From positions 62,001 through 126,000 of IMG/VR virus record IMGVR_UViG_3300044633_000899: DNA of 64,000 nucleotides. One strand, written 5' to 3'. The position numbers and the translations under genes were made by a program. Shown one piece after another: positions 6,869 through 62,920 of the stretch; the stretch's first letter is position 1; every line of letters begins with the position of its first letter. The notes beneath the pieces are model-generated. The model did not search any database. It was given only the letters and a program-made list of their open reading frames with translations, and was not told the origin of the DNA.

Positions 6869-7249
6869 TTATTTGTTTTTGATGATTATATCAGATATTA
6901 GGTCGTAATACATATCCGCGACAACATCTTCATCCATATCTTCATCTTTAACTTCGTTAAAACCAATTGCGTATAATAGGTTAATAATATCAAAATAATA
7001 GAATGGTAAATCAACAACACTAGGTAGCCCTTGAAGCCATTCTATTATTGCTTTTTTCTCACCCATTCTGTTAATCGCCCAACCGTACTCACTTTGGAAT
7101 ATATTATATAACGAACCAAATTTATCACTTGAATTTTCGTATTCATCATAACCAGTTAAATCAATACCTTCTTCAACAAAGGACTCCAATTCTTCAAAAG
7201 GTGTTTTTTCAATATATTCCAATAATATTCTTTTTATAATTTTTTTCAT
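6869..7249 (-). CDS. leader-bearing hypothetical protein (putative virion cargo)
   Basis: Starts MKKIIKRILLEYIE; TATTTAT just upstream on the minus strand. Confidence 0.6.
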   Translation of the reverse strand: MKKIIKRILLEYIEKTPFEELESFVEEGIDLTGYDEYENSSDKFGSLYNIFQSEYGWAINRMGEKKAIIEWLQGLPSVVDLPFYYFDIINLLYAIGFNEVKDEDMDEDVVADMYYDLISDIIIKNK

Positions 7250-7260
7250 ATCAATAAATA

Positions 7261-8082
7261 TTATCCAACTAACAAATTGTGATATTTTTTAAACTTTTCT
7301 AATCTATCGTCAATACCATTTTCACCACCATTGATACGTTTAGTAAGTTTTTTAACAACCTCATCTGTTGAACCAAGATCACATATTGACCAAAGTTTGT
7401 TTGACTCAAAGAAAAACCCAGCGGAAGCCAAAGGGTATTTTGTTGCAACAAGATCTGGATTAGCAACACAATCTTCACCAATAAAGTCAGAAAATTTTTT
7501 ATAATTGGACTTACCGGTCGCTTGTAGGTAACCTCGCCCACGAAATTTATATCCCTCTTTAGATACTTCATCTCCGTTATCCATACGGTTAGCATAAACC
7601 CTTGACGCAATCTTTTCTGGTTGTTTAGCATATGATTCAGCCAAGTTACCAGGAAAGTATTTACCAAACGTTCTTTTTAATCCGTCAACAGAATAATTTA
7701 AATTTTCTGATACTACTTTAAAATTACCTGACTCGTGGGCACATTGTGATAAAAAGTGAGCAAGTCTGAGATTTGTTGTGATATTAAATTTATTAGCGGC
7801 TTCTGGTATTTGGTTTAATACAACATCAGGGATATGACCCTTTAGTTTCTCAATGTTTAGTCCTGTTACTGGTTTGATTACTACATCTTCTTTAATTACA
7901 ATCGGAAACATTTTGTTCCACGTTATACTACCAACAACACCGTCATCTTTTAGTCCGTTTTCTTTTTGCCAAGACTTAATAGCACTTTCAGTTTTTGAAC
8001 CAAAACTACCGTCAGCAACTAGTCCTAATTTTTTTTGGATTTTTTTTACATCATCACCTTTTGAACCAATTTTAATTTCCAT
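7261..8082 (-). CDS. endolysin: peptidoglycan-binding domain + GH19 glycosidase
   Basis: N-terminal GSKGDDVKKIQ..ADG.FG..TE..IK.WQ..NGL..DG.VG; AHFLSQCAHESGNF, FRGRGYLQATG, TKRINGG. Confidence 0.9.
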   Translation of the reverse strand: MEIKIGSKGDDVKKIQKKLGLVADGSFGSKTESAIKSWQKENGLKDDGVVGSITWNKMFPIVIKEDVVIKPVTGLNIEKLKGHIPDVVLNQIPEAANKFNITTNLRLAHFLSQCAHESGNFKVVSENLNYSVDGLKRTFGKYFPGNLAESYAKQPEKIASRVYANRMDNGDEVSKEGYKFRGRGYLQATGKSNYKKFSDFIGEDCVANPDLVATKYPLASAGFFFESNKLWSICDLGSTDEVVKKLTKRINGGENGIDDRLEKFKKYHNLLVG

Positions 8083-8095
8083 AATATTTCTTTAG

Positions 8096-8111
8096 TTATA
8101 AATATTTATAA
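8096..8111. promoter_or_regulatory. palindromic bidirectional late-type promoter TTATAAATATTTATAA
   Basis: Perfect 16-bp palindrome giving the TATTTAT motif on both strands, between divergent genes. Confidence 0.55.
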
Positions 8112-8121
8112 ATAAAGAATT

Positions 8122-8730
8122 ATGAGTTATAGTAGAGAACAAATTGAAACGGCAGTTAAAGCCAAAGGATATAAGTGGTTTGAAGACGCTTCAAATAAAA
8201 CTTATGATGTAAACATTGTTGGAATAAGAAATAACACATCAACTGTTGCTGATAAAGTAACAAATGTATTTGACGATTTCATTACAATATCGTTTAAAAA
8301 TGAGAAAGGTTTTTGGGAATTTTATTGTTGGAACGCAACTACAGATCCAGGTAAAAAAGGTGTTGAAAAATTTACAAATAAAAATGGCGTTGCTAGATTA
8401 GTACCAAATCAATACAGAGGTGTTTGGATGATTGATAAACATCAAGGTAAATATGACGCATTATGTCAAAGATTAGATAACGTGACTGTATTTCGTGATG
8501 CTAACAAGGATATGACATATGATGAAAAAGTTACAGACACTGGTATGTTTGGTATTAACATACACAAGGCCGGTCAAGATTCCACATGGGTTGACGATTG
8601 GAGTCACGGATGTCAAGTGTTTAAAAGGGTTAAAGATTTTGATGTGTTTATGAAAATTTGTAAAAAAGCGGCTAAGATACACGGTAATAAATTCAGTTAT
8701 ACATTATTAGAAAGTACTGATATTATTTGA
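8122..8730 (+). CDS. YkuD/L,D-transpeptidase-like cysteine peptidase
   Basis: GINIHKAG-x9-WSHGCQV matches the H..S.GC catalytic signature. Confidence 0.55.
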   Translation: MSYSREQIETAVKAKGYKWFEDASNKTYDVNIVGIRNNTSTVADKVTNVFDDFITISFKNEKGFWEFYCWNATTDPGKKGVEKFTNKNGVARLVPNQYRGVWMIDKHQGKYDALCQRLDNVTVFRDANKDMTYDEKVTDTGMFGINIHKAGQDSTWVDDWSHGCQVFKRVKDFDVFMKICKKAAKIHGNKFSYTLLESTDII

Positions 8731-8757
8731 TATTTAAAATCTTTTTTATTACATTTG
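8726..8757 (+). promoter_or_regulatory. Bacteroidota-type promoter TTTG-N20-TACATTTG
   Basis: Both elements present, directly before the ATG at 8762. Confidence 0.7.
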
Positions 8758-8761
8758 TGGT

Positions 8762-10369: not shown

Positions 10370-11344
10370 CTACCAAGTAACATTACAACCAGACATAGGT
10401 AAACCACTTTTATTACCAAAATCAATAACAAAACTACTAATAGTGTTCTCAATATAGTCTCTAAATTCAAAAGATTCTTCGAAATCATCAAATGGTGATT
10501 GTGTACTACTAAATCTAAGAGGTTCATCGTTTTCATCATAAACAACACCTTCGGTCACTGTTGCGTCAACGTAACAATATATTTTACCATCTTCATCATC
10601 AAAACGGATAGAATCTATAGTAAACCTAAGTTTACCTTCAAACCAATCATCAGAAAAATCATTTTCAGTGAAAACTTGATCCTCAAGTAATTCTTTAATA
10701 ATTTGTGCGCGACTATTGATATCACTATATTCGGCATAAAACTCCATAATATTTTTTAGTTTTGATTTTAAACCCATTCTTTTAATATCATTATAATTTA
10801 ATTTAACTTCTAAACCACTTTCTTTTTGTTTATCCCAAAGATTAAATAAGAACACTTTAAAAGGGTCATTATTTGTCTCAACAATTCTATTTTTTTTACG
10901 TAAAGTTTTTGACTCGTAATATTGATTAAATTTGTTTAACATTTTATAATATTGTTGTAACAAATCGTACCTATCAAATTTATTTGATAACCAGTTTTCA
11001 CCATTTCTATATTCGTTATTTTGGTCATCAAAAGTTATAAAGTTATTTGGGTTGTTACCATATAAACGATAAATAGCAAAAGCATTACTACCAAGTTTTT
11101 CTTTTATTTCTTTATTTCTAATTACGATATAACCTAAAACGCCCAATTTTATATGTTTATTAAAATCTTTATCACAATCTCGTTTTGTTGTACACCATTT
11201 TGTGTCGGATCCATATTTTCTTGAAGCACTATGTGTTAACGGAATTGTTAATATAAAGTCATCGTCACGATACAACTCAACGGATTCGTCGGTTGAAACT
11301 TTATGTACTTCTTTTAAAATTTTTTTAATAATCGTCTTCATCAT
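10370..11344 (-). CDS. leader-bearing protein with PLT..YG..TKWC domain
   Basis: M(M)KTIIKKILKE start; IPLTHSASRKYGSDTKWCTT. Confidence 0.65.
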   Translation of the reverse strand: MMKTIIKKILKEVHKVSTDESVELYRDDDFILTIPLTHSASRKYGSDTKWCTTKRDCDKDFNKHIKLGVLGYIVIRNKEIKEKLGSNAFAIYRLYGNNPNNFITFDDQNNEYRNGENWLSNKFDRYDLLQQYYKMLNKFNQYYESKTLRKKNRIVETNNDPFKVFLFNLWDKQKESGLEVKLNYNDIKRMGLKSKLKNIMEFYAEYSDINSRAQIIKELLEDQVFTENDFSDDWFEGKLRFTIDSIRFDDEDGKIYCYVDATVTEGVVYDENDEPLRFSSTQSPFDDFEESFEFRDYIENTISSFVIDFGNKSGLPMSGCNVTW

Positions 11345-11960
11345 CAAATTCTTCAATATCGTAAGTGTAATTTTGTTGAAACTCTATAATCCATATTGTG
11401 TCAAAATATTTATTTAATTGTTCGTCAGTTAAATCAACAATTGGTATATTTTCACCATCAATATACGCCATAGTACGACCAACAGATTTAAACCATTCAA
11501 TTTTTTGTTCTCTATTGTAATTCGGTATCTTTTTTTGAATTTCAGATTTACATAAACCACCTTTAAAATTATAAGGTGCAACACGATCAACATCAGTTAA
11601 TGAAAGTTTTGAACGACTATTAAAATCATCAAGATATGTCTCTTCAATGTAATCACCTATCATTTCAGTAACTAAACCCTTTCTAATTTTAAAATACTTA
11701 CTAACCTCATTGATTATTTTATCATCTATTAATATTTCAACATCTTTATCGGTACCCATAAATAGACCAATTTCTTTACCATTAGAACAAAATTCAACAC
11801 GATAGTCACCGTATGTTTGATCTTCAGTATAATGGTCTAAAGTATATCTCTTAAACACTAAGTTAATATACTTCATAATTATTGAATATAACTCTGGTGT
11901 TACTTTATTATAACGTTTTTTTATTTCTTCCCTTAAAATTTTTTTAATAATTGATCGCAT
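11325..11960 (-). CDS. leader-bearing hypothetical protein
   Basis: MRSIIKKILREE; TATTTAT upstream on the minus strand. Confidence 0.65.
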   Translation of the reverse strand: MRSIIKKILREEIKKRYNKVTPELYSIIMKYINLVFKRYTLDHYTEDQTYGDYRVEFCSNGKEIGLFMGTDKDVEILIDDKIINEVSKYFKIRKGLVTEMIGDYIEETYLDDFNSRSKLSLTDVDRVAPYNFKGGLCKSEIQKKIPNYNREQKIEWFKSVGRTMAYIDGENIPIVDLTDEQLNKYFDTIWIIEFQQNYTYDIEEFDDEDDY

Positions 11961-13718: not shown

Positions 13719-14562
13719 TGATCAAATAATTAGTGAAGTTAGAAACGAGTCAATGTTAAATAAAAAACAAGATCGTATAATAACGATTGATGACACAATA
13801 ATTAAAAAATACATCAATATTAACGTATATGGTTACGATAATGATTATAATAATTTAAATATTGATTATATCTCCAAACATAGAGGTTTTCCAAATTTAA
13901 TTAATAGGTTATTATATGAGGTTTATGTTGATTATTTAAATGATAATGAAGATAAAACAATGACTGGTATTGTAGGTATTTTTACACCAAATGAATATAC
14001 CAATTGGTCAATACTTAATTATTTTGGTGGACATAAATTTGTTAAAGACATTTTAATCCAGGAGTTTAAAAACGATAAAACAACACAAAAAACGCCAAAA
14101 GAATTTTACCGTTGGTTAATAACCAATAAGAGTATGTTGTTTGGTGAAAAATCACAGATTTTAAAAAAGTTGGTTAGAACAAACCTAAATACTTTTAATA
14201 AAGGAACAAAAACGGAATTATTTTTAACAAAAGTACTTAAAGAATCTGGATTTGATGTTAAGTACTTTCCGCCAGGTTCAACATATGATAGAAAATATGG
14301 TATTGATTTAATTATAAATAACACCTCATACCAAATTAAAGAATTAGTTGGGATTGAGGAATTAAATGATGGGTATTATTTAAAAACACCATTACCTAAA
14401 GAATATAAAAACCTTAATGTTAAACGAATAATGTTAGTTGATATCAATAATGGTGAGTTTGTATCGTTTCCGAATAAAGATTATGTTGTTAGTCAGAAAG
14501 ATAATGCTTTTATTGTTGATAAATCTACTAAACTAAAAGTTGGAAATATATTTAAACTATGA
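13711..14562 (+). CDS. putative PD-(D/E)xK nuclease-fold protein
   Basis: G..TE....L...GF.V..D..YGIDL.....YQIK pattern in the C-terminal half. Confidence 0.4.
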   Translation: MNNDQIISEVRNESMLNKKQDRIITIDDTIIKKYININVYGYDNDYNNLNIDYISKHRGFPNLINRLLYEVYVDYLNDNEDKTMTGIVGIFTPNEYTNWSILNYFGGHKFVKDILIQEFKNDKTTQKTPKEFYRWLITNKSMLFGEKSQILKKLVRTNLNTFNKGTKTELFLTKVLKESGFDVKYFPPGSTYDRKYGIDLIINNTSYQIKELVGIEELNDGYYLKTPLPKEYKNLNVKRIMLVDINNGEFVSFPNKDYVVSQKDNAFIVDKSTKLKVGNIFKL

Positions 14563-15065
14563 AAATAATTATAACCGAAAGCCAATATAAATTCTTAACT
14601 GAAAATTTTGATTCTGTTTTGGATATATACTCAAAGAAAAATAAAGGTGAAACATTAAAACCTTCCGAATTGGATGTGTTAAAAGTTTTTAATGATTATG
14701 TAAAAAAAGGTGGCACACCAGAAGAATTTGTTTTTAATCAAGACGATGTTTATGGATTTGATGAGAGAGAAGGTATGTTATTTAATTATAATCTAAAAGG
14801 TCGGCCATTACAATTTGAGTTCACTGAAGAAACTGAAACCGAAAATGATATTGACTATTTTGGTGAAATAACATTTGATGGTGATGAATACCTCGGCGTT
14901 ATTGTAACGGATAAAAATGGTTATTTAATTGATTATGATTTTTACTCAACGTTAACAAAAGGTGATGTTAGATTACAGGAATTATTAATTGTTGATAATA
15001 GTGATGCAGAATTTAGAAATTTTTTACAAGAAATGGTTATTAACGTTTTAATAAATGAAAAATAA
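14559..15065 (+). CDS. leader-bearing acidic hypothetical protein
   Basis: MKIIITESQYKFLTE start. Confidence 0.65.
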   Translation: MKIIITESQYKFLTENFDSVLDIYSKKNKGETLKPSELDVLKVFNDYVKKGGTPEEFVFNQDDVYGFDEREGMLFNYNLKGRPLQFEFTEETETENDIDYFGEITFDGDEYLGVIVTDKNGYLIDYDFYSTLTKGDVRLQELLIVDNSDAEFRNFLQEMVINVLINEK

Positions 15066-15536: not shown

Positions 15537-16973
15537 GTGAAAATTTTATTAAACGAGAAACAATTCAAAAATATTGTAGTTCTATTATCTGAAGATGACG
15601 ATAAAAAAATAAACGTAATGTTTGTTGGTGACAGCCATAGTGATGGCCAAGGGTACACCTGGAATTATGATTTAGAGAAACAACATCCAGAATGGAATGT
15701 AACACATATTGTAAAAGGTGGTAAAACAACAGAGTGGATGTTAGAAAATATGTTACCAGAATTATCAAAAAAACATTATGATTTAGTTTTCATATTAGGT
15801 GGTACAAATGATGTTATGTCACCATTACCAATAGAGACACCAATCAACAATATTCAAAAAATGGTTAATGCAGTCAACACCCAAGGTGGAAAAGCAATTG
15901 TTGTTATCGGATTTGATAGTGAATCTATTATGGATGTAAATAAATTACGAACAACGAAATATTGTGACAAAGAATGTTTAAAAAAGTTTAAACCAAAAAG
16001 AGTTGAATTCCAACGTAAATTAGAAAGTTCAATCCAAAACGCAACAATAGTACCACCACTTGTTGGTGATTACACTTGGGCAAATGATGGTATACACGTC
16101 GGCGGATCAAAACACAAACTATTATCAAGTACCGTTGAAAATTATATAACAAAAGGTGAGGTTAAAAACCAAAAAAAATCACTAATTAATCAACTATTAG
16201 ACAAGTATACAGAAGTAATCCAAAACAAAAGTACAATTGACGCAATAAGTCCAAGAAAAGAGATTAAATTATTACAAATACTTTTTTCAATTGCTGAAGG
16301 TCAAAAGAACAGAAATTTTTCTGGTACATTAGATTCTGACACCATTACTAGACTTAAAAAATATCAAACAACTAATAATTTACCGAATACAGGTATTTTT
16401 GATTATCAAACAATTTATAGTATAAACAACAAGATAAGCCCAAAATTAAATAAAGTTTTAAAACCAGAAATGGCAAAAGAAACAATATCAGATCCTGGAT
16501 CCTCAATTGTTAGTACGAGTAAATTAGTTAATGATTTAAAATCATTTGGTTTAACTGAAAATGCTGCAAAAGGTTTGACAGCAAACGCATATGGTGAAAG
16601 TGGTTTAAATTATAAAGCGAAAGGTGATTCGGGTTCCTATGCGAAGAACACTACAAAATCAATTGATATTGGTGGTAAAAAATATTGTTCATTTGGTTTA
16701 TGGCAATTTAATGTGTGTGGTGGGTTAGGTATTGAGTTTTTAAAAAAATACAATACACTTAACAGTGGTAATACGGATAAAATAGAAACTCTGTTTGATT
16801 ATAATAAACAATTAGAGATTATGGGTTCTAAGATAATGAAAGAACAATCTAAAGGTGATAAGAGTGTTAAAACTTGGATTGACTGGATTGTTGATAATGT
16901 TGAACGACCTGCTGACAAATCTGGTGCAAAACAAAAACGACAAAATTTTGCTAAACAACAAGGTTGGATATAA
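15537..16973 (+). CDS. leader + SGNH/GDSL esterase + PG-binding + phage tail lysozyme-like protein
   Basis: FVGDSHS, GGTND, DGIH; LKKYQTTNNLPNTGIFD; AAKGLTANAYGESGL..FGLWQF; GTG start after TATTTAT. Confidence 0.7.
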   Translation: MKILLNEKQFKNIVVLLSEDDDKKINVMFVGDSHSDGQGYTWNYDLEKQHPEWNVTHIVKGGKTTEWMLENMLPELSKKHYDLVFILGGTNDVMSPLPIETPINNIQKMVNAVNTQGGKAIVVIGFDSESIMDVNKLRTTKYCDKECLKKFKPKRVEFQRKLESSIQNATIVPPLVGDYTWANDGIHVGGSKHKLLSSTVENYITKGEVKNQKKSLINQLLDKYTEVIQNKSTIDAISPRKEIKLLQILFSIAEGQKNRNFSGTLDSDTITRLKKYQTTNNLPNTGIFDYQTIYSINNKISPKLNKVLKPEMAKETISDPGSSIVSTSKLVNDLKSFGLTENAAKGLTANAYGESGLNYKAKGDSGSYAKNTTKSIDIGGKKYCSFGLWQFNVCGGLGIEFLKKYNTLNSGNTDKIETLFDYNKQLEIMGSKIMKEQSKGDKSVKTWIDWIVDNVERPADKSGAKQKRQNFAKQQGWI

Positions 16974-16976: not shown

Positions 16977-17426
16977 ATGAAAATAATAATAACTGAAAAT
17001 CAATATAAATTGATTAAAGAAAATATTTCTTTAAAAGAAAAATTATTGGGTTTAATCAAAAAAGTTGGATTTAAATCTGTTGTAAAAATTGTCGGATCTT
17101 TGGATAAAACATTTGAAATTTTTGATATCAAAAAACCAATGGATTTCTTAAACTTGTATAATGATTTGGAATCAGTTCAGAGTGAGGAACAACCTGATTG
17201 GACTTTATTTCGTTATGAAAAACACAAAAATTTAATGATTTACCATAGAAAAAATGACTACGTTTACATCAATTATGATGAAATTTGGTCAGTTTTGGAA
17301 GATAAATTTGGTCTTAACTACTCTGAAATACAAAAACTTACAGAGAGGTGGTTGGATGAGGTATACAATTTAAGGGGAGTCACACCAACGGAAGGAAATT
17401 GGAACCAAAAAGATTGGGTTGGATGA
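16977..17426 (+). CDS. family-A paralog 2 with leader and spacer-encoded C-terminus
   Basis: MKIIITENQYKLIKE; ends WLDEVYNLRGVTP-TEGNWNQKDWVG*. Confidence 0.7.
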   Translation: MKIIITENQYKLIKENISLKEKLLGLIKKVGFKSVVKIVGSLDKTFEIFDIKKPMDFLNLYNDLESVQSEEQPDWTLFRYEKHKNLMIYHRKNDYVYINYDEIWSVLEDKFGLNYSEIQKLTERWLDEVYNLRGVTPTEGNWNQKDWVG

Positions 17427-35100: not shown

Positions 35101-35418
35101 ATGAACCTACAAGAACAAATATCAAGAATCCAGTCAATGATGGGGGTTAACGAATCATTTTTTGATTGGTTTAAATCGTCAGAAGAAAAACCAACTCAAT
35201 CAGAAGAAAGATTTACCTGTGAAGATTGTGGTGAACAAAACTACAATATGTATATGGTTAATGATGATTTATGGGATAAATATGGTAATGAAAAAATGAC
35301 TTTATGTAAAAGTTGTTTGGAACAAAGAATGGGTAGAGAATTAACCAAAGATGATATCTCACAACATAAAGACGCATTGACAAATATTCATAATCCAGAA
35401 TTAAAAAACTTTTACTGA
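35101..35418 (+). CDS. leader + Zn-finger protein
   Basis: MNLQEQISRIQSMMG; CEDC..CKSC. Confidence 0.65.
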   Translation: MNLQEQISRIQSMMGVNESFFDWFKSSEEKPTQSEERFTCEDCGEQNYNMYMVNDDLWDKYGNEKMTLCKSCLEQRMGRELTKDDISQHKDALTNIHNPELKNFY

Positions 35419-37942: not shown

Positions 37943-38395
37943 ATGAATCTACAAGAATCCATAAGAAGAATATTACGGGAAGAAACAACACTCCAAAGTA
38001 GAGTAAACGAGTTGATTAACACAAAAGGGGTTGTTCTTGCATCAACAATGGTTGGTGGACTTGACACACTATCAAAGATATTAAACTTAGATTTAAATGA
38101 TGTGGACACACAAGAAAAATTAGTTAAAAACTTTATTAATTTTTATGATCTTAAAGAAGAAAGTATTATTATAGATTCTTTAGAAGTTAGGACAACGGTA
38201 AATAGGGGAAAGGTTATCAAAGTAAATGGAACGGTTAATGACGATTGGGAGAATTTTAGTTCGTGGTACGTTCTCCACATTTGTGGTGAGATGGAGAGAT
38301 TTTTCCCATTTAACACTCAACCTTATGATCACTCTGTTTTTACCAATAGTGGTGTTAAAATATTCATAGAATCGGAATTTTTATACGAAGAATAG
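37943..38395 (+). CDS. leader + family-A-like N-terminal module
   Basis: MNLQESIRRILREE; LI...G...A...VGG...L. Confidence 0.65.
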   Translation: MNLQESIRRILREETTLQSRVNELINTKGVVLASTMVGGLDTLSKILNLDLNDVDTQEKLVKNFINFYDLKEESIIIDSLEVRTTVNRGKVIKVNGTVNDDWENFSSWYVLHICGEMERFFPFNTQPYDHSVFTNSGVKIFIESEFLYEE

Positions 38396-45161: not shown

Positions 45162-45560
45162 ATGAAAATTATTATTACTGAAGACCAACATAACAAATTA
45201 AAAGATAATTTAATGAAACTTATTAATCGTTCCGAATTTAGTGTTGGGGTTAAAGCGGTTGGTGGTTTAAAGAACTTGATTAAAATTTTATATGATGGTG
45301 ATTATAATTCATTTGTTAAATATGTGTCTGATGATTTAATTTACAACACACATAAAGTTAGACATCATTATTTTTTATTTGATTGTAACATCTCTATCTT
45401 TTTAGATCATTCAGAGAGATATAACCCTGTTTTTAGTTTTAGACCTAGTTGTTTTAATAGTGTTATGCGGGAGAAATATGGTGTGGACGATAAATATATT
45501 TCTTCCATATGGAAACAATATTCAAACTATGTTATTAATAGGTATTTAAAAGAGAATTAA
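45162..45560 (+). CDS. leader + family-A-like module
   Basis: MKIIITEDQHNKL; LI....F..GVKAVGGLKNL. Confidence 0.65.
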   Translation: MKIIITEDQHNKLKDNLMKLINRSEFSVGVKAVGGLKNLIKILYDGDYNSFVKYVSDDLIYNTHKVRHHYFLFDCNISIFLDHSERYNPVFSFRPSCFNSVMREKYGVDDKYISSIWKQYSNYVINRYLKEN

Positions 45561-47955: not shown

Positions 47956-48174
47956 ATGAAAAACTTTTTTATTTATCAGATTTATTTTATTTTAAACCTT
48001 CTTGTTTTAAAATTATTCATTGGGTTTCTTATTACCTATTTTATTGGTGGTAGTTATCTTTATGTCATTATGTGTTCGCTTGTTATTGCGATGGATTTGG
48101 ATGATATGATTGATCGTCAACGAAACTTTGATAGATATTATCCCCACTTCAGTAATAAGTGGTTGTATTTTTAA
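47956..48174 (+). CDS. small membrane protein
   Basis: Hydrophobic; CTTG-N19-TATCTTTG promoter 47904-47934. Confidence 0.55.
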   Translation: MKNFFIYQIYFILNLLVLKLFIGFLITYFIGGSYLYVIMCSLVIAMDLDDMIDRQRNFDRYYPHFSNKWLYF

Positions 48175-48220
48175 CCATTAATCCCCATTTTCTAATAAGA
48201 ATTTGGGGTTTTTATTTTTT
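48142..48220 (+). terminator. repeated intergenic hairpins/terminators
   Basis: CCCCACTTCAGTAATAAGTGGTT recurs at 48648; CCCCATT..TGGGGTTTTT recurs at 49010 and 50173. Confidence 0.65.
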
Positions 48221-48250
48221 GATATATTTATTAAATAAAACAAAGAATTT

Positions 48251-48741: not shown

Positions 48742-48996
48742 ATGAAAAGAATAATTAGACTAACAGAATCCGATTTAACTAGGATTATTAAAAGAACCAT
48801 TATAGAGATGGAGGAAGATGACGACGAAGTTATTGTAAATGTTAACGACATCGCAAAAGAAGACATGGCCTGTTTTAATGATGTTGCAACACCTTCAGGA
48901 ATGAACGGAGGAAAATATAAGAGAAAAAAGAAAGGTTGTCAAACTAAAACAAGATATAAAAGTAAAACAAAATATTACGGAAACAATAGATTCTAA
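48742..48996 (+). CDS. leader-bearing protein with basic C-terminus
   Basis: MKRIIRLTESDLTRIIKRTIIE. Confidence 0.65.
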   Translation: MKRIIRLTESDLTRIIKRTIIEMEEDDDEVIVNVNDIAKEDMACFNDVATPSGMNGGKYKRKKKGCQTKTRYKSKTKYYGNNRF

Positions 48997-50642: not shown

Positions 50643-50659
50643 TTATATATAAAACCAGT

Positions 50660-52441
50660 ATGAAAAAAATAATTAGATTAACAGAATTGGATTTGGTATC
50701 AACGATAAATAAAATTATCACTGAACATAAATTTATTACTGAAATAGGTGATTTACAATCACCATATGAAAAATTAATGACTTGCAAATTCACATCTGAT
50801 GGTAAACATGTTGTTTATGAAGGTAAAGCATACTCAACAATAAATGGGAACGAAGTCTTAATTAATGAAAATTGGAGTTTGAGTGATATATTACATACTG
50901 GTGCGGATCTTTTATCTGCTGGTATGGATTTTGTAATCCCAGGTTCTGGTGCTGTTATTGATGTTTTAAATGCACTTAGTTATATTATTGAAGCACAATT
51001 TAAATCTGAAAAAGAAAGAGATTCACTATATATTATGGCGGCAATAACATTCGCTTTTGTTATATTGCCTGGACCATTACAAGCAATTGCAATACCACTT
51101 AAACGAGCAGTTAAGACTGGTGTTGGTTTGGCGTCAAAAATTGTTGTTAAGGGTTTAAAAATTGTTGGTGGAATTTTGGATACAATATTACTTAAATTAC
51201 CAAGTAAAATAAAATCTGCATTACAATCAACTTTGGCAAAAAAGATTCTCGGTAGATTTAGAGGTAAAATTACTGGATTTATTGATAAGTTTACATCAAG
51301 GATTAAACAAATATTATCAACAATTACAGGTAAAACCGGTAAGAAGGGTGTTGAAAATTCAGTAAATGTTAGTTCCGATCAATTTAAAAAAATGTTTGAT
51401 ATTGATAGAACTCTTGGTAAATATGGTTTCAAGGAAACTCCTGAAACAATAAACGCAACATTAAAAAATGTTAACTTTACCAAAGATGGAATAAAAGTTG
51501 TTAATAAAACAACACACAGTCAAGGTCAAGAAGCGTTTTCGGCGGTATTACCTAATAATGTGAGAATGATATTTTATAATAGTAGTAAAGGCTGGATTCC
51601 AATAAAAGGATATAATGGAAAAAAAGCAATACAAATGACAGATATAGACTCAAAGTATGTTAAAGATTTAATATCGGTTTTGAACCGTGAGGGACTGAGT
51701 GGGTTAGGTAAACAAGTTGGTAAACAAGTTGGTAAAAATACCATTACTCCTGTTGCGATACAAGCAGCAAAAAACTTTTTTAGTAGAATACCAAAAATTT
51801 CACAAGGAGCAAAAGTTTTAAGAAAAGCGGGCTTTGCTAAAGGTTATACGTATAAATATATGGGTCCTAAAGGTCCTTTAAAGGGAACAATTTCGGAAAT
51901 AACGGACAGTGGCGTTAAGATATTATTTGAGAAAAACGGTAGGAAATTCACAACAATGGTTCCTGTTGAAACCTTCATTAATAAGGCTGTGGGTGCACCT
52001 TGGTTGAGAAGAGGGTGGGGAGTAACAGTTCCGTTGTTTGTTAAAAGATTTAGTGATATGTTATTAGCTGACGGATCAAATATTGATTATAATAAGTTAG
52101 ATTCTATTCCAGATTTAGATCCCAAACAAACATCATCAGAAACAGAAACTTTTTTACAAGGTGAAGTTGCGGAGTATGAAGGTGAAAGTGATTACACAGT
52201 AAATACAAACGTCCAAAATATCCAAAACGCATTACTAGCATTAGGATATCAATTACCTAATGCAGGTGCTGATGGTAAATTTGGTCCAGAAACAAAAACT
52301 GCTTTAGAGAAATTCCAAAAGGATAATGGTTTAACAACATCCGTAGGAAAAATGGATAGATTAACAACTAAAAAATTGGCGGAAAAATTAAAGGGTAAAA
52401 ACCTTGAACCCGATTTACAAAATAATTTAAACAAAATGTAA
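50660..52441 (+). CDS. leader + pre-toxin-like helical segment + C-terminal PG-binding domain
   Basis: MKKIIRLTELDL; LHTGADLLSAGMDFVIPGSGAVIDVLNALSY; IQNALLALGY....ADGKFGPETK.AL..FQ..NGL. Confidence 0.6.
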   Translation: MKKIIRLTELDLVSTINKIITEHKFITEIGDLQSPYEKLMTCKFTSDGKHVVYEGKAYSTINGNEVLINENWSLSDILHTGADLLSAGMDFVIPGSGAVIDVLNALSYIIEAQFKSEKERDSLYIMAAITFAFVILPGPLQAIAIPLKRAVKTGVGLASKIVVKGLKIVGGILDTILLKLPSKIKSALQSTLAKKILGRFRGKITGFIDKFTSRIKQILSTITGKTGKKGVENSVNVSSDQFKKMFDIDRTLGKYGFKETPETINATLKNVNFTKDGIKVVNKTTHSQGQEAFSAVLPNNVRMIFYNSSKGWIPIKGYNGKKAIQMTDIDSKYVKDLISVLNREGLSGLGKQVGKQVGKNTITPVAIQAAKNFFSRIPKISQGAKVLRKAGFAKGYTYKYMGPKGPLKGTISEITDSGVKILFEKNGRKFTTMVPVETFINKAVGAPWLRRGWGVTVPLFVKRFSDMLLADGSNIDYNKLDSIPDLDPKQTSSETETFLQGEVAEYEGESDYTVNTNVQNIQNALLALGYQLPNAGADGKFGPETKTALEKFQKDNGLTTSVGKMDRLTTKKLAEKLKGKNLEPDLQNNLNKM

Positions 52442-52504: not shown

Positions 52505-52819
52505 ATGAAAAATATAAACCAATTATTTCGTAGAAACCCCGGACTACTTGATGAACCTGAAGTAAAACAATTAATTGAATACACCCAGGATCTTGAAGGT
52601 CAAGTTATGGAAAATAAAGTTGATGATGATTATAACAAAGAACATATGTTAAAATCAATGTTATCAGATATTCTATTAAGTTGTAGAGAATATGAAGAGA
52701 ATAAACTTCTACAAGACCGTTACCCAGATTTATATAAGAATCTTGATCCAGACACTTTGGTTAAGAACTTAATGGTTTATATTTTGGATATGAACCGTAA
52801 AAATAATTTAAAACTATGA
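52505..52819 (+). CDS. hypothetical protein
   Basis: TATTTAT upstream. Confidence 0.6.
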   Translation: MKNINQLFRRNPGLLDEPEVKQLIEYTQDLEGQVMENKVDDDYNKEHMLKSMLSDILLSCREYEENKLLQDRYPDLYKNLDPDTLVKNLMVYILDMNRKNNLKL

Positions 52820-52893
52820 AAAAAATTCTTCCTTTCTGATTGGACGTTTTAACAAAAAAAATATGTTATATATATTTATATATAAACATCAAT

Positions 52894-53124
52894 ATGAAAA
52901 GAATAATAAAACTAACAGAGTCTGATGTAACAAGAATTGTTAACAAAATTATAACCGAATCTGAAACAACAGAAATGATGGCACACACTCAAAAATCGTT
53001 AAGACATGAGGCCGTTTTTTTATTAAAAAATTTAGGGTTAAAAACTGAAGATGAAACCGTCAGTGATGTTACAGATATAATTAAATTCATAATACAAAAA
53101 TATGGTGGTAAGGTTTTAGATTAA
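52894..53124 (+). CDS. leader-bearing small protein
   Basis: MKRIIKLTESDVTRIVNKIITE. Confidence 0.65.
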   Translation: MKRIIKLTESDVTRIVNKIITESETTEMMAHTQKSLRHEAVFLLKNLGLKTEDETVSDVTDIIKFIIQKYGGKVLD

Positions 53125-58698: not shown

Positions 58699-59295
58699 AT
58701 GATGAAACATACATTAACTATATTATTAATTTTATTTAATTTGTACACATTTGGACAATGTAATGGTACAACGTCTTTTACATTAACACCACAACCAGTG
58801 AATAACACCTATCAATCAGGTCAAACCGTCACTATGTGTTTTACAATGAATGGCTATACACAAGCAGGGACAAATTGGTTTGAAGGTTTTGACCTTAACT
58901 TGGGTGTTGGTTGGCAAAGTGTGTCACCACAAACAACACCAGCAAACTGTGGTGGTAATAACAGTGGTGGACAATGGGTATGGAGAACCTCCGTGACATC
59001 AACGACAACACCAATTACAACTGTTGGTCCTGGTTATTTCTTTGATTTAAACAACGATGGTAATCCAGGTAATGATTTTGGTGATTCAGGATCTTGTATT
59101 TGGTCGTTTTGTGTTACATTAGTTGTTGCAAACACTTGTACAACACAAAGTTTATTAATCCAAGTAACACCAGGTTCCGATGGTGTATGGGGAAGTTACA
59201 ATAGTTCATCGTGTGATAATGTTACACCAATAAATGTCTTTAACGGAACAATAAACTCGGTACCAATAACACTTGGGCCAATAACACATAATTAA
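58699..59295 (+). CDS. secreted beta-rich protein ending GPITHN
   Basis: Signal peptide ..LYTFG|Q; Thr/Gly/Cys-rich. Confidence 0.7.
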   Translation: MMKHTLTILLILFNLYTFGQCNGTTSFTLTPQPVNNTYQSGQTVTMCFTMNGYTQAGTNWFEGFDLNLGVGWQSVSPQTTPANCGGNNSGGQWVWRTSVTSTTTPITTVGPGYFFDLNNDGNPGNDFGDSGSCIWSFCVTLVVANTCTTQSLLIQVTPGSDGVWGSYNSSSCDNVTPINVFNGTINSVPITLGPITHN

Positions 59296-59297
59296 TT

Positions 59298-59876
59298 ATG
59301 AAAAAACTATTAGTATTTTTAATGATAATGATATCGGGAATAGCATTATCACAATCAACGGTAAACCCAGACACAGTTTGTTATCAATCAACAGCGTTAT
59401 CAACGTATTCCGTACCAAATATTGGTGCTGGAACATACACTTGGACTGTAACAACACCGGGGGTAATAACAAGTGGGCAAGGAACAAGTACAATTTCTGT
59501 TAATTGGTCTACAGCAGCACCTGGATTAATACCAAATGGTGTTTCTGTGACGTATTCATCACCACCACCAGCCAATTGTCCAGCAACACCTGTTACTCTA
59601 AACGTTTTAATCTATAATATTACACCAACAATAACACAAATTGGCCCTTTTTGTGAGTCAGATCCTTGTGTTACATTAAATGGAACACCAATTGGTGGTG
59701 TTTTTAGTGGTGTTGGGGTCAATGGTACACAGTTTTGTCCTGATTTAGTTGCTAATGGTACAAATAATACCTCAACAATAACATATACAATAACATCTGG
59801 TGGTTGTACATTCTCAACACAATCAACTGTTGGGGTTTATGGTACGCCATCATTATCACCAATACAACATAACTAA
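59298..59876 (+). CDS. secreted PKD/Ig-like protein ending SPIQHN
   Basis: Signal peptide ..GIALS|Q; YTWTV..G.ITSGQGT..I.V.W. Confidence 0.7.
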   Translation: MKKLLVFLMIMISGIALSQSTVNPDTVCYQSTALSTYSVPNIGAGTYTWTVTTPGVITSGQGTSTISVNWSTAAPGLIPNGVSVTYSSPPPANCPATPVTLNVLIYNITPTITQIGPFCESDPCVTLNGTPIGGVFSGVGVNGTQFCPDLVANGTNNTSTITYTITSGGCTFSTQSTVGVYGTPSLSPIQHN

Positions 59877-60439
59877 TGAAACTCATTATTTTTATATTAT
59901 TCTTTTGTTCATTTACCTTATTAGGGCAACAAACCTTTGAATTATGTCCTGGTGAGTTAAAAACTGTTAGTTATTTCTCAGAAACTAATAGTATTGGTAT
60001 AAATATATGGTCAGTTAACGGATTAACATACATTGGAGACACCTTAGTATACAGTTTTAATCAACCAGGTGTGTATAATATTGATTTAGTTAGGGAAAAT
60101 GTACTATGTAGGACTGAAGAGTCGTACAATGTCACAATAACACCCTGTATTGGGGTCATTTATTGGATTCCAAACGCATTTACACCAGATAATAACGAAT
60201 TTAATCAAACATTTAGACCTATTTTTAATGATGGGATAGATATTGATGGTTTTTCGTTCACTATTTATAACAGATGGGGTCAATTAATCTGGGAAACAGA
60301 GGATTTGAACGTAAATTGGGATGGAACATACAATAATACTATATGTTCGGATGGTATTTATATCTGGAATCTTAAATTTAACGTAAAAAACAACGATGAA
60401 AAGAGAAATGACCACGGACATATTGTAATAATACGTTAA
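59876..60439 (+). CDS. T9SS type-B sorting domain (gliding motility-associated CTD) protein
   Basis: IPNAFTPDN...N..F.P..F.IYNRWG..I.ET....WDG....DG.Y.W..GHI..IR; signal ..TLLG|Q. Confidence 0.85.
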   Translation: MKLIIFILFFCSFTLLGQQTFELCPGELKTVSYFSETNSIGINIWSVNGLTYIGDTLVYSFNQPGVYNIDLVRENVLCRTEESYNVTITPCIGVIYWIPNAFTPDNNEFNQTFRPIFNDGIDIDGFSFTIYNRWGQLIWETEDLNVNWDGTYNNTICSDGIYIWNLKFNVKNNDEKRNDHGHIVIIR

Positions 60440-60491
60440 AAGTTGACATTTACTCAATTTTTACCTATTTTTTAATAAAAAAGTAATAATT

Positions 60492-61141: not shown

Positions 61142-61158
61142 AATATTAAATATAATGA

Positions 61159-61314
61159 TTAAACGGTTTTCTTTAATTGTTTAATTTCAACCTCATATGG
61201 TCCTGTATTTGTTTTATAATTATCATATTTCCAAATCATAATACAATCAGTCATCACATATGTTCGTTCAAACTTCTTTTGTTCTATTGTTTTTTTAGTT
61301 TTTTTATCGTTCAT
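61159..61314 (-). CDS. small protein (51 aa, not in ORF track)
   Basis: MNDKKTKKTIEQKKFERTYVMTDCIMIWKYD..GPYEVEIK. Confidence 0.55.
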   Translation of the reverse strand: MNDKKTKKTIEQKKFERTYVMTDCIMIWKYDNYKTNTGPYEVEIKQLKKTV

Positions 61315-61377
61315 AGTACAAATATAGTAAAAAAAATAAAACCCCTCTTATGGAGGGGAGTAAAATTTAATAAAATG

Positions 61378-61611
61378 TTAATCTTGTGACTCTTTTGTGT
61401 CGTCTTTAAAGAAATTTGTCAGAAATTTACCGACTACACCAAAAACGATTGAGGATACAATCATAATTTTTAATTCGCCAGTACTGAAAATTTCCTTTAG
61501 ACTGTCATATTGCCAAATACCACCAATTGCAATAACTGTTGCTACAGCCAATAAAGAGTCTCCTAACCTTCTCCATTTTTTTGGAGTTGGAGTCCAATAA
61601 TTCTTCATCAT
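61378..61611 (-). CDS. two-TM holin-like membrane protein
   Basis: MMKNYWTPTPKKWRRLGDSLL followed by two TM helices; TATTTAT upstream. Confidence 0.5.
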   Translation of the reverse strand: MMKNYWTPTPKKWRRLGDSLLAVATVIAIGGIWQYDSLKEIFSTGELKIMIVSSIVFGVVGKFLTNFFKDDTKESQD

Positions 61612-61707
61612 ATTTTTATTTATAAATAGTTTGAAAATAAAAAAGGGACAGTAGCGAATTGTCCCCTTTAACATTACCATAACCAGTAATGGTCCTAAGC
61701 AAAATTA

Positions 61708-62238
61708 TTATTGTCCTTTGACTAAATTAATACATTGTTTTAAATATTCTTTTGTTCTTGGTGATGGTGTAAATTCGTCATCCTTTGTTTGTAGATTTAA
61801 AACACGTTCAATATCTTTAACTAATTCTGTACCATGCTCATTTTCCTTATATAACTCAGTAACTTTATCCATCGCCTTACGACATTCATTTGTTGTTTCG
61901 TCATAATAGTGTTTATTTCTAAAACGATTTAAACCATTCATCATTTCGTAAGCCAAATGTGATCCACCATCTTTTATATCTTTAAATAATCTTACATTAT
62001 TTAATATACCTAAAGTATCAACCATTGAGTTAACACCACTTCTTCTTTTTGTCACACCTGGACCATATTTAATATATTCATCTGCAAACCCAACAATTTC
62101 TGTTAAGGGTACAACGTTTTCAGGTAAACATCTTGGTTGTACATCTGTTTTTTTAGGTGATTTTTTTTCTGATTGTTCGGATAAAACTTTACCAATAATT
62201 CTATTAATATCACTCTCGTTTAATCTATATTTTTTCAT
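61708..62238 (-). CDS. leader-bearing hypothetical protein
   Basis: MKKYRLNESDINRIIGKVLSEQ. Confidence 0.65.
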   Translation of the reverse strand: MKKYRLNESDINRIIGKVLSEQSEKKSPKKTDVQPRCLPENVVPLTEIVGFADEYIKYGPGVTKRRSGVNSMVDTLGILNNVRLFKDIKDGGSHLAYEMMNGLNRFRNKHYYDETTNECRKAMDKVTELYKENEHGTELVKDIERVLNLQTKDDEFTPSPRTKEYLKQCINLVKGQ

Positions 62239-62305
62239 AGTAATAATTTAATATGTTTGTTTATTCTACTTTTAAATGTATTTATATTAATAAATATCTG
62301 TTATT

Positions 62306-62920
62306 ATGAGAATTTTAGAAAATATTATTAAAAGAGTTATAAAGGAAGAACTTAGCCCAAAATTAACATTATTAGAAAATGTTGGAATATCGGATAATTT
62401 AAAATATCATATTGATAATAATATTAATCTTTCTGAAACTATCTTTAGAGTTTATTCTGATTCTTATTTTAGTTTAATAAATGAAGTTAGAGAGTTGTAT
62501 TTTAATGATCAGATTAGAGTCCCTAATCGTGATCTTTGGATTATTGAAAGTGATTTAGGTAAATCAGTAATACTTGAAGATGGTAGAAAGATCTGGTTAG
62601 ACGTACCATTTGAAATTGATGAACAATTGAATGAGGCAAAACATAGAGGTAGGGATGTCAAACTAAATAAACCTTTTAGAACACCAGGTGGGTCTAAGAA
62701 ATTTGCTGTTTACGTTAAAACACCTAGAGGAACAATAAAAAAAGTAACATTTGGTGACCCAAATTTAAGAGTTAGAAACGCTAACAAAAAAGCCGCAAAA
62801 TCATTTAGGGCTAGACATAAATGTGACCAGAAAAAAGACAGAACAACCGCAGGATACTGGTCGTGTAATGTGGGTAGATATGCTAAGTCACTTGGGATTG
62901 TATCTAAGAACAAATGGTAG
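62306..62920 (+). CDS. leader + conserved basic phage domain
   Basis: MRILENIIKRVIKEE; KKFAVYVK..KKVTFGDP..SFRARH.C..AGYWSC. Confidence 0.65.
   Translation: MRILENIIKRVIKEELSPKLTLLENVGISDNLKYHIDNNINLSETIFRVYSDSYFSLINEVRELYFNDQIRVPNRDLWIIESDLGKSVILEDGRKIWLDVPFEIDEQLNEAKHRGRDVKLNKPFRTPGGSKKFAVYVKTPRGTIKKVTFGDPNLRVRNANKKAAKSFRARHKCDQKKDRTTAGYWSCNVGRYAKSLGIVSKNKW

What the first reader, a model, noticed from the sequence alone, without database searches (positions are those of the whole stretch)
6869..62920. At least 25 unrelated proteins share N-terminal Glu-containing leaders: a candidate genome-wide capsid-loading tag
Seen, three leader classes: MK(I/F)I(I/L)TExQY..L (14559, 15537, 16977, 45162, 49503, 49691, 50227, 54460-minus, 54814); MKKxI(R/K)LTESDLxRIVKxVIxE (48251, 48742, 49112, 50660, 52894, 55246, 62238-minus); and MNLQExIR(K/R)ILREE or its variants (32545, 33498, 35101, 35421, 37943, 38424, 7249-minus, 11344-minus, 11960-minus, 62306). 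What follows the leader is unrelated from gene to gene: esterase-lysozyme, Zn fingers, PG-binding domains, an ART-like fold, acidic domains. Known: T4 internal proteins carry a short capsid-targeting sequence that prohead protease gp21 removes after Glu. Inference: these amphipathic helices ending in (L/I)xE dock many cargo proteins onto the prohead scaffold for injection into the host, so any domain fused to the tag becomes a virion-delivered effector.
Basis: partly seen in the sequence, partly recalled or inferred. Interest (0 to 1): 0.85.

Follow-up and report, generated by a model that had tools for sequence, protein, structure and literature searches.

The report
Likely capsid-loading tags on phage proteins
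In this 64-kb piece of an uncultured 296-kb T4-like phage, 26 mostly unrelated proteins begin with the same few short Glu-containing peptides, which most likely load them into the phage head before a head protease cuts the tag off; this extends a known T4 mechanism and is not yet shown by experiment.

Summary
All 26 N-termini are at the stated coordinates, and profile searches find these 26 gene starts and no others.

The three classes are related. Class B is an A-like half (MKxIIxLTE) joined to a C-like half (xRIVKRVIKE). Orthologous cargo carries different classes in different phages.

The window is bases 62,001-126,000 of IMG/VR contig 3300044633_000899. About 44 kb downstream, that contig encodes a T4-type portal, an S77 (gp21-like) prohead protease, a very acidic scaffold and a gp23-like capsid protein.

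- Every leader contains (L/I)-x-E, the T4 gp21 cleavage motif.
- In one conserved family the leader ends in (I/L)xE|ATSDS. This matches the predicted capsid maturation site, FLINE|ATSD.
- Leader genes share the upstream motif ATATTTAT with the protease, scaffold and prohead-core genes.
- Synonymous codons vary, so selection acts on the peptide.
- The class B leader alone matches 8,368 protein clusters in public data.

The T4-like capsid-targeting reading is well supported by sequence analysis, but no proteomic or cleavage data exist. I rate it a new, greatly expanded variant of a known kind, with confidence of about 0.6.

The parts
14559..15065 (+). class A leader gene (MKIIITESQYKFL...), 168 aa, cargo unknown
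15537..16973 (+). class A-like leader (GTG start, VKILLNEKQFK...) + GDSL esterase + PG_binding_1 + Phage_lysozyme2, 478 aa
   Evidence: ATATTTAT 14 nt upstream
16977..17426 (+). class A leader gene, 149 aa; paralogue of 54814, of leaderless 15055 and of L109:6198 in the head module
45162..45560 (+). class A leader gene, 132 aa
49503..49694 (+). class A leader gene, 63 aa
49691..50161 (+). class A leader gene (MKKIIITEEQ...), 156 aa
50227..50592 (+). class A leader gene (MKFIISESQY...), 121 aa
53696..54460 (-). class A leader gene (MKKYLITEDQ...), 254 aa
54814..55239 (+). class A leader gene, 141 aa
48251..48628 (+). class B leader gene (MKKVIRLTESDLTRIVKRVIKE), 125 aa, acidic C-terminus
48742..48996 (+). 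class B leader gene, 84 aa
49112..49501 (+). class B leader gene, 129 aa; its orthologues carry a short C-type leader
50660..52441 (+). class B leader + hydrophobic segments + C-terminal PG_binding_1, 593 aa
52894..53124 (+). class B leader gene, 76 aa
55246..55788 (+). class B leader gene, 180 aa
61708..62238 (-). class B-like leader gene (MKKYRLNESDINRIIGKVLSE), 176 aa
32545..33060 (+). class C leader gene (MNIQKSIRKILRE), 171 aa
33498..35048 (+). class C leader gene, 516 aa, with a tandem second leader copy at 33555-33590; the C-terminal part looks like a muramidase/PG-binding region by eye only
35101..35418 (+). class C variant leader (MNLQEQISRIQSMMGVNES) + Cys-pair zinc-ribbon-like domain, 105 aa
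35421..36713 (+). class C leader gene, 430 aa, with an internal second leader copy (TNLQESIRRIIREE) at about 36369-36419: a tag-cargo-tag-cargo fusion
37943..38395 (+). class C leader gene (MNLQESIRRILREE), 150 aa
38424..39947 (+). class C-like leader gene, 507 aa, with an internal leader-like copy at about 38985-39032
6869..7249 (-). class C variant leader gene (MKKIIKRILLE), 126 aa
10370..11344 (-). class C variant leader gene (MMKTIIKKILKE), 324 aa; cargo paralogous to 35421
11325..11960 (-). class C variant leader gene (MRSIIKKILREE), 211 aa
62306..62920 (+). class C variant leader gene (MRILENIIKRVIKEE), 204 aa; C-terminus matches phrog_7595
48171..48250 (+). example of the intergenic cassette upstream of leader genes: G/C hairpin + T-run (terminator-like), then ATATATTTAT (promoter-like), then a short untranslated stretch. 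Similar copies at 48998-49111, 50160-50226, 50585-50659 and 52816-52893

Best explanation
The leaders are capsid-targeting propeptides of the T4 kind.

Proposed mechanism (inferred unless marked shown):
1. Leader-bearing genes are transcribed together with the head-morphogenesis genes.
2. The N-terminal peptide binds a component of the assembling prohead core. The peptide is a hydrophobic stretch ending in I/L-T-E (classes A and B), a basic amphipathic helix ending in (I/L)-x-E (classes B and C), or both. The very acidic gp22-like scaffold is the obvious candidate partner.
3. The cargo is thereby enclosed in the prohead.
4. The gp21-like S77 prohead protease cuts after the Glu of (L/I)-x-E, removes the tag and frees the mature protein inside the head.
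5. The cargo is then ejected with the DNA at the next infection.

Shown here: the leaders and their modularity, selection on the peptide, the T4-type head gene set in the same genome, the cleavage-type motif, and the shared upstream motif.
For: 1. Same genome: the window is bases 62,001-126,000 of a 296,330-bp contig. Bases 160,515-182,341 of that contig encode Portal_T4, Peptidase_S77 (79 bits), a 508-aa scaffold with 154 acidic residues, and Gp23 (251 bits).

2. Cleavage motif: T4 gp21 cuts after L/I-X-E, and the T4 CTS is the first 10 residues of IPIII (PMC9026906). Real T4 sequences are IPII/IPIII MKTYQEFIAE|A, gp24 MAKINELLRE|S and gp23 ..SFLTE|A. All 26 leaders have [LI]xE. In 84/84 class B leaders from metagenomes, LTE is invariant and [LIV]xE sits at residues 20-22. 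The Glu ending the leader is invariant across 32 aligned orthologues (of 35 distinct found) that carry different leader classes.

3. Junction mimicry: the clade's capsid protein has FLINE|A in the 57 capsid sequences where the site motif was found, mostly |ATSD, aligned with T4's SFLTE|A. A conserved structural-module family has leader-(I/L)xE|AT(S/G)DS.

4. Co-regulation: WTATTTAT lies within 45 nt upstream of 15/26 leader genes and 15/92 other genes (p=6e-5), in 30 genes in sense orientation and 9 in antisense. Across the clade it precedes the prohead-core gene (44/49), the protease (45/60) and the scaffold (28/33).

5. Location: a class A gene sits between the portal/core genes and the protease in this genome. 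33/34 capsid-centred loci of at least 15 kb hold at least one leader gene.

6. Modularity: one cargo family carries B, C or A-like leaders in different phages. A leaderless paralogue exists at 15055.

7. Peptide-level selection: identical residues share a codon in 64-76% of pairs, against 50-56% expected from codon usage.

8. Cargo type: the recognisable cargo acts on the cell wall (GDSL esterase + lysozyme, PG-binding, M23 peptidase in relatives), as expected for ejected proteins.

9. Structure: AF2 models the leader as a separate N-terminal helix ahead of the folded core.
Against: - There is no proteomic, cleavage or packaging evidence. No cultured relative exists: the nearest cultured capsid protein is 43% identical and the leaders are absent from 50,697 GenBank phages.
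- The leaders have no significant sequence similarity to the T4 CTS.
- A 22-residue tag that is nearly identical across thousands of families is more conserved than T4's CTS needs to be. The partner could therefore be something other than the scaffold.
- 22% of the window's genes carry a tag. That is a large load for one capsid unless copy numbers are low.
- The motif [LI]xE is short and fairly common: about 0.36 are expected in 23 residues, and 21% of non-leader N-termini have one.
- Late timing is only inferred from a shared AT-rich motif in an AT-rich genome.
- Well-conserved internal copies show that a free N-terminus is not required.
- The ubiquitous RYMFF family lacks the upstream motif (0/38).
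Confidence: 0.6

Rival explanations
1. The leader is a retained docking or adaptor helix for another conserved partner. Candidates are a tail or baseplate component, a hub protein that gathers many enzymes, or an unknown sorting or export route in the infected cell. In this reading it is not removed by the prohead protease.
For: - The 22-residue sequence is extremely conserved across 8,368 clusters, which suggests a precise protein-protein interface.
- Internal copies are conserved as well as N-terminal ones.
- The amphipathic helix has a high hydrophobic moment of 0.75.
- Cell-wall-active cargo must reach the periplasm somehow.
- The lysozyme domain is of the 'phage tail lysozyme' type.
Against: - It does not explain the invariant Glu in an (L/I)xE context at the leader end.
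- It does not explain the ATSD junction shared with the capsid maturation site.
- There is no hydrophobic signal-peptide core.
- No candidate partner gene was identified.
- The short polar or acidic linkers after the Glu look like propeptide junctions.
Confidence: 0.2
2. The leaders are N-terminal degradation or regulation tags. The phage ClpP (window 6133-6867), with a host unfoldase, would recognise them and give timed turnover of many accessory proteins.
For: - A true ClpP (PF00574, 159 bits) is encoded in the window, next to a leader gene.
- N-terminal ClpX recognition motifs of the form Met-basic-hydrophobic are known (my own knowledge, not tested here).
Against: - Conserved internal copies would not work as N-degrons.
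- Leader genes lie inside head modules and share the head-gene motif.
- ClpP genes are common in large phages that lack such leaders.
- No co-occurrence test was possible.
Confidence: 0.06
3. The conservation lies in the nucleic acid or arises from gene shuffling. It would then be a translation-initiation element for mRNAs with very short 5' UTRs, or recombination sites that spread a promoter-plus-5'-end cassette, with no function for the peptide itself.
For: - Very short gaps of 4-6 nt separate the promoter-like motif from the ATG.
- Hairpin-plus-promoter cassettes flank the genes much as T4 PeSLs do (PMC2839356).
- Codon identity is slightly above expectation.
Against: - Synonymous codons vary freely. 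DNA identity between class B copies is only 68-88%.
- The peptide stays nearly invariant across thousands of distant families.
- Internal, in-frame copies are conserved as peptides.
- Cassette-mediated shuffling may well explain how the tags spread, but not why the peptide is kept.
Confidence: 0.04

Closest known systems
Capsid targeting sequence (CTS) of T4 internal proteins IPI-III, and the gp21-removed propeptides of gp24 and Alt
   Same: - A short N-terminal peptide on otherwise unrelated, fast-evolving proteins.
- It ends in L/I-x-E.
- The phage has an S77 prohead protease, a gp22-like scaffold and a gp23 capsid protein.
- The T4 gp24 propeptide MAKINELLRE|S resembles class C (..IRRILRE|E) in format.
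- The genes lie in plastic regions of a T4-type genome.
   Different: - No significant sequence similarity to MKTYQEFIAE.
- The leaders are longer (13-24 residues, against 10) and bipartite.
- There are several interchangeable classes, and internal copies occur.
- The scale differs greatly: 26 genes in 64 kb and 8,368 clusters, against a handful in T-even phages.
- The function is untested.
Propeptides of the head and ejection proteins of giant phages phiKZ, 201phi2-1 and SPN3US
   Same: Many head proteins (about 19 or more) are processed after Glu by a gp21-related protease. Large numbers of proteins are packaged and ejected (PMC9026906; PMC5694885).
   Different: Their motif is S/A/G-x-E and they have no shared conserved leader sequence. 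Here P3 is L/I/V and the leader itself is highly conserved. The capsid gene set here is T4-like, not phiKZ-like.
PeSL mobile regulatory cassettes of T4-type phages (Arbiol et al. 2010, PMC2839356)
   Same: G/C-rich stem-loop plus promoter cassettes flank orphan genes in hyperplastic regions and may drive modular shuffling.
   Different: PeSLs carry sigma-70-like early promoters and do not include a coding leader. Here the promoter-like motif is shared with head genes, and the conserved unit extends into the first 13-24 codons.
Cargo-loading peptides of encapsulins (analogy only, from my own knowledge)
   Same: A short, transferable peptide directs diverse cargo into an HK97-fold protein shell.
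   Different: Encapsulin peptides are usually C-terminal, are not cleaved, and bind the shell protein directly. There is no homology.

Membership tests
T4-type capsid-targeting propeptide (CTS) | Short N-terminal peptide shared by otherwise unrelated proteins | tested here: met
   26 proteins; cargo mostly unrelated by BLASTP
T4-type capsid-targeting propeptide (CTS) | Peptide ends in the gp21 cleavage motif L/I-X-E | tested here: met
   26/26 in the window; 84/84 class B leaders have LTE, 74/84 have [LI]xE at the second site (the other 10 have V); Glu invariant in alignment A3
T4-type capsid-targeting propeptide (CTS) | Genome encodes an S77 (gp21) prohead protease, a scaffold core and a gp23-type capsid protein | tested here: met
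   L109 lies on the same contig: Peptidase_S77 79 bits, Gp23 251 bits, Portal_T4 230 bits, acidic 508-aa scaffold
T4-type capsid-targeting propeptide (CTS) | Made at the same time as the prohead (late expression) | tested here: inconclusive
   The upstream motif is shared with the protease, scaffold and core genes. No expression data exist.
T4-type capsid-targeting propeptide (CTS) | Sequence homology to the T4 IP CTS (MKTYQEFIAE) | tested here: not met
   Only the format is shared; tblastn of two representative leader proteins (class B and class C) finds nothing in 50,697 GenBank phages
T4-type capsid-targeting propeptide (CTS) | Tag is sufficient for incorporation into proheads and is removed by the protease; cargo is ejected | not testable with these tools
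   Needs virion proteomics or N-terminomics, or reconstitution
phiKZ-type head propeptides | Cleavage motif S/A/G-X-E | tested here: not met
   P3 is L, I or V in all leaders examined
Sec/Tat/lipoprotein signal peptides | Hydrophobic h-region of 10-20 residues, followed by a signal-peptidase site | tested here: not met
   The leaders are charged and amphipathic (net +4 for B; K/R/E/D throughout). True signal peptides in the window (58699-60439) look different.
RiPP leader peptides | Conserved leader on short core peptides, next to modifying enzymes | tested here: not met
   Cargo is 60-600 aa with enzyme or binding domains, and no maturase genes were seen
PeSL regulatory cassette | Stem-loop terminator plus promoter flanking orphan genes in plastic regions | tested here: inconclusive
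   Hairpin + T-run + ATATATTTAT cassettes at 48.1-52.9 kb. The promoter type differs from the sigma-70-like PeSLs, and no recombination products were examined.

The most novel reading that the evidence does not exclude
The leaders may be a general, bipartite address code rather than a simple copy of the T4 CTS. The A-half and C-half could specify different docking sites, ejection orders or destinations. The tag could work internally as well as N-terminally, so that fused tag-cargo-tag-cargo proteins are processed like polyproteins. On this reading, an abundant uncultured clade of T4-like phages delivers a repertoire of thousands of protein families with its DNA. That would be the largest virion-delivered effector set known, and it could be read directly from sequence.
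Probability: 0.2. Interest if true: 0.9.

Novelty: new variant of a known kind. Interest (0 to 1): 0.72.

Why it matters
If the tags work as proposed, proteins that these phages carry in the capsid and inject with their DNA could be recognised from sequence alone. The clade is very abundant and uncultured: more than 8,000 capsid-protein clusters and 8,368 clusters tagged with class B.

Such injected proteins act first in an infection. They include cell-wall breachers and probably counter-defence proteins, and they are usually impossible to predict.

The finding would also give a ready-made, short, transferable loading tag for a large-capsid phage. It would show that T4's CTS principle has been scaled up by orders of magnitude in nature. 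The swapping of leader classes on the same cargo, and the tag-cargo-tag-cargo fusions, offer natural experiments on what the tag needs in order to work.

Tried and rejected
- tblastn of class B and class C proteins against 50,697 GenBank phages gave no match, so there is no cultured carrier.
- Pfam and PHROGs on all 26 proteins left most cargo unannotated, with no 'internal head protein' family.
- I first suspected the ClpP at 6133-6867 of being the head protease because of its PHROG name. It is an ordinary ClpP. The real S77 protease lies elsewhere on the contig.
- AF2 of the 49112 protein was too poor to use (pLDDT 55).
- AF2 of the RYMFF family was usable (pLDDT 71.6), but it had no significant match in BFVD. 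The family's sequence profile also had no significant match to PDB sequences (E=0.32 to the HK97 delta domain).
- The protein atlas search on the 35421 N-domain gave only weak leads (PcfJ, PBECR4).
- A full-text search for the leader motifs found 0 papers.
- A host-type Bacteroidota -7 box (TAnnTTTG) upstream of the non-leader genes appeared in 10 sense and 7 antisense cases, so it is not decisive.
- A DNA-level element was rejected on codon evidence.
- I could not scan the remaining roughly 200 kb of the contig, so the genome-wide count of leader genes is unknown.

Full report

- Class A: MK(I/F)I(I/L)(T/S)ExQ(Y/F).
- Class B: MK(K/R)xI(K/R)LTESDLTRIVKRVIxE.
- Class C: MNLQExIR(K/R)ILREE, with shorter variants such as xIIK(K/R)ILxE.

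Only 15537 uses GTG as its start codon. I built profile HMMs from the leaders and ran them over every stop-to-stop frame of the window. They recover exactly these 26 gene starts. They also find three internal copies: a tandem one in the 33498 ORF, one near residue 318 of the 35421 ORF, and one near residue 189 of the 38424 ORF. Reversed-sequence controls peak at 14 bits, against 15-50 bits for the leaders. The 26 genes make up 22% of the 118 ORFs I called in the window.

Two points of the description need correcting.
- The classes are not independent. The A model also scores the first half of B, and the C model scores the second half. Class B is therefore an A-like half joined to a C-like half.
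- The cargo is mostly but not wholly unrelated. After removing 28 N-terminal residues, BLASTP links only {11344, 35421, leaderless 25778} and {16977, 54814, 38424, leaderless 15055}.

Pfam confirms GDSL esterase + PG_binding_1 + Phage_lysozyme2 in 15537, and PG_binding_1 in 50660. No tool supported an ART-like fold.

**2. Peptide or nucleic acid?**

Within the leaders, synonymous codons vary freely: Thr uses ACA/ACC/ACT/ACG, Ser uses TCT/TCC/TCA/AGT, and Arg uses CGA/AGA/AGG. Identical residues share a codon in 64-76% of pairs, where genome codon usage predicts 50-56%. DNA identity between class B copies is only 68-88%. Selection therefore acts on the peptide.

**3. How widespread is it?**

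A search with the 49112 protein found more than 80 metagenomic proteins with a nearly identical class B leader and unrelated C-termini.

A 30-column profile of the class B leader was scored against 1.84 billion cluster representatives. It gave 8,368 hits at E<=0.001 and 490 at E<=1e-10. Among the 150 hits listed, almost all matches are at residue 1. Some proteins carry two copies, one N-terminal and one internal. The part after the internal copy is sometimes a family that also exists as a stand-alone leader protein. These proteins are therefore tag-cargo-tag-cargo fusions.

None of 50,697 GenBank phage genomes has the leaders, and a full-text search for the motifs found no paper.

**4. Modularity.**

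- Close orthologues of the 49112 protein (69-87% identical in the cargo) carry MGTELINIIKRVLKEE or MKTNLKNIIKRVLNEE in place of the class B leader.
- A conserved 150-180-aa family (..RYMFFSNLEQMRRQC..) carries class B, class C or A-like leaders of 15-30 residues in 35 distinct orthologues. The Glu that ends the leader is invariant in the 32 that I aligned.
- Homologues of the lysozyme domain of 15537 in related phages all have a leader, again of varying type: MKLKITESQLKKL.., MSKRFIISEDEKKQIRGMYNL.., and MKGLLNEHLTRIRSLMSINES.. followed by an M23-like domain.
- A leaderless paralogue of 16977 lies at 15055.

**5. What genome is this?**

The window contains thymidylate synthase, a Dam-like methylase, an RNA ligase, ClpP and one tRNA-Glu.

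The 15537 gene matches IMG/VR contig IMGVR_UViG_3300044633_000899 (296,330 bp) at 100% identity. This places the window at bases 62,001-126,000 of that contig.

Bases 160,515-182,341 of the same contig (locus L109) hold these genes in order:
- a T4-type portal with an intein;
- a 238-aa protein;
- a class A leader gene (MKIIITENQYKLIKENISLKEKL.., a paralogue of 16977);
- a 155-aa protein;
- a Peptidase_S77 protease (79 bits);
- a DUF4494-like protein;
- a 508-aa scaffold with 154 acidic and 66 basic residues;
- a Gp23-type capsid protein (251 bits);
- further on, a class C-tagged member of the RYMFF family.

This capsid protein has more than 8,000 relatives in public data, on contigs of up to 321 kb. 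The closest cultured phages are only about 43% identical: Microcystis phage Mel-JY01 and Flavobacterium phage immuto. The phage is therefore an uncultured, abundant, distant T4 relative with a jumbo genome. The host is unknown; Bacteroidota is only a guess.

**6. Does the T4 precedent fit?**

In T4, gp21 cuts after L/I-X-E. The first 10 residues of IPIII are a capsid-targeting sequence that is sufficient to load foreign proteins. Reviewers have suggested the CTS is how T4-like phages load diverse proteins (PMC9026906; PMC3012670).

From the T4 record itself, IPII and IPIII start MKTYQEFIAE|A, gp24 starts MAKINELLRE|S, and gp23 is cut at ..SFLTE|AEIGG.

Here:
- All 26 leaders contain [LI]xE, against 19/92 other N-termini.
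- All 84 class B leaders from metagenomes have LTE at residues 7-9 and [LIV]xE at residues 20-22.
- The clade's capsid protein aligns with T4 gp23 so that ..ASFLINE|AT.. falls at T4's ..GSFLTE|AE.. In the 57 capsid sequences where the site motif was found, all read INE|A and 28 read INE|ATSD.
- A conserved structural-module family has a class C-type leader that ends (I/L)xE and is followed directly by AT(S/G)DS, for example MLSEIIKKVLRE|ATSDSGG.

That a leader/cargo junction copies the predicted capsid maturation site is the most specific sequence-based sign that the same protease removes the leader.

**7. Co-regulation.**

ATATTTAT sits 4-19 nt upstream of the start codon of about 30 genes. 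WTATTTAT lies within 45 nt upstream of 30 genes in sense orientation and 9 in antisense. It precedes 15/26 leader genes and 15/92 others (Fisher p=6e-5). Most of the remaining leader genes directly follow a motif-bearing gene or have one-base variants of the motif.

Across more than 100 related loci, the motif precedes the 238-aa prohead-core gene (44/49), the S77 protease (45/60) and the scaffold (28/33). It rarely precedes the capsid gene itself, and it never precedes the RYMFF gene. The nucleotide-metabolism block at 12-31 kb almost lacks it.

Leader genes thus belong to the same promoter class as the head-morphogenesis genes, which is what a prohead-loading tag requires. Actual expression timing is not shown.

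Each leader gene at 48-53 kb is preceded by a G/C hairpin with a T-run and then this motif. The arrangement recalls the PeSL shuffling cassettes of T4-type phages (PMC2839356) and may explain how tagged genes spread.

**8. Shape of the tag.**

The B second half and class C have helical hydrophobic moments of about 0.75, and class B carries a net charge of +4. AF2 of the RYMFF protein (mean pLDDT 71.6) models the leader as a separate helix at residues 3-16, with lower confidence than the following helical bundle at residues 20-78. A basic amphipathic helix binding a very acidic scaffold is plausible, but this is inference only.

**9. Verdict.**

The best explanation is a T4-style capsid-targeting propeptide system, much expanded and using new sequences (confidence about 0.6).

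Rivals:
- A retained docking helix for another partner or destination (about 0.2).
- A ClpP-related degradation tag (about 0.06). Conserved internal copies and the link to head modules argue against it.
- A nucleic-acid or recombination artefact (about 0.04). The codon data argue against it.

The main weaknesses are the lack of any proteomic or cleavage evidence, the shortness of the [LI]xE motif, the number of tagged genes per genome, and promoter timing that rests on inference alone. It is a new variant of a known kind, of clear interest because it would allow injected proteins to be predicted from sequence in a very abundant uncultured phage group.

Noticed in passing
L109:2359-5454 (same contig as the window, about bases 162.9-166.0 kb): The T4-type portal gene is 1,031 aa long. 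It contains an intein (Pfam Intein_splicing, residues 159-542) inserted ahead of the Portal_T4 domain.
   Followed up: partly
window 6133-6867 (+): A bona fide ClpP protease (PF00574, 159 bits). PHROGs labels it 'head maturation protease', but the real S77 prohead protease is elsewhere on the contig. Its role is unknown.
   Followed up: partly
window 42846-42918 (-): The tRNA-Glu(UUC) is 95% identical to the tRNA-Glu of Flavobacterium phage vB_FspM_immuto. It lies in a gene-poor stretch of higher GC (0.34), about 41.2-44.5 kb, with no convincing ORFs and no Rfam match other than the tRNA.
   Followed up: partly
window 48171-48250, 48998-49111, 50160-50226, 50585-50659, 52816-52893: Repeated intergenic cassettes: a CCCCA..TGGGG hairpin, a T-run, then ATATATTTAT. 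The copies at 50591-50673 and 52822-52904 are 87% identical over 83 nt. They resemble the PeSL shuffling cassettes of T4-type phages.
   Followed up: partly
window 58699-60439 (+): Three tandem genes of about 190 aa (198, 192 and 187 aa), each with a classical hydrophobic signal peptide. They are unlike the leaders and their function is unknown.
   Followed up: no
window 31749, 32201, 40555, 40907, 53394, 54521 and several leader proteins (38424, 50227; L001 and L006 relatives): Many small proteins share a second motif, (I/L)RRR(I/L/V)xxxD(L/F), either at the very N-terminus or just after a leader. BLAST does not detect this possible remote paralogue family.
   Followed up: no
L109:11960-13684 and L008:13602-15215: A large homing-endonuclease-like gene (phrog_3339/559) sits directly beside the major capsid gene in several members of the clade, much as segD sits beside gene 23 in T4.
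   Followed up: no
window 19656-20480 (+): A beta-keto acid cleavage enzyme (BKACE, PF05853, 206 bits) lies within a block of metabolic-looking genes. It may be an auxiliary metabolic gene.
   Followed up: no
A3 alignment, columns about 140-150 (L109:20911-21357 residues about 90-100): The RYMFF family has a conserved internal (V/M)M(M/S)EG|RKK site between its helical bundle and a small Cys-containing C-terminal domain. It might be a second processing site.
   Followed up: no
window 23710-23958 and 27883-28116 (+): Two paralogous genes of about 80 aa lie near the RNA ligase (23960-25075) and the AAA ATPase (26870-27811). Function unknown.
   Followed up: no
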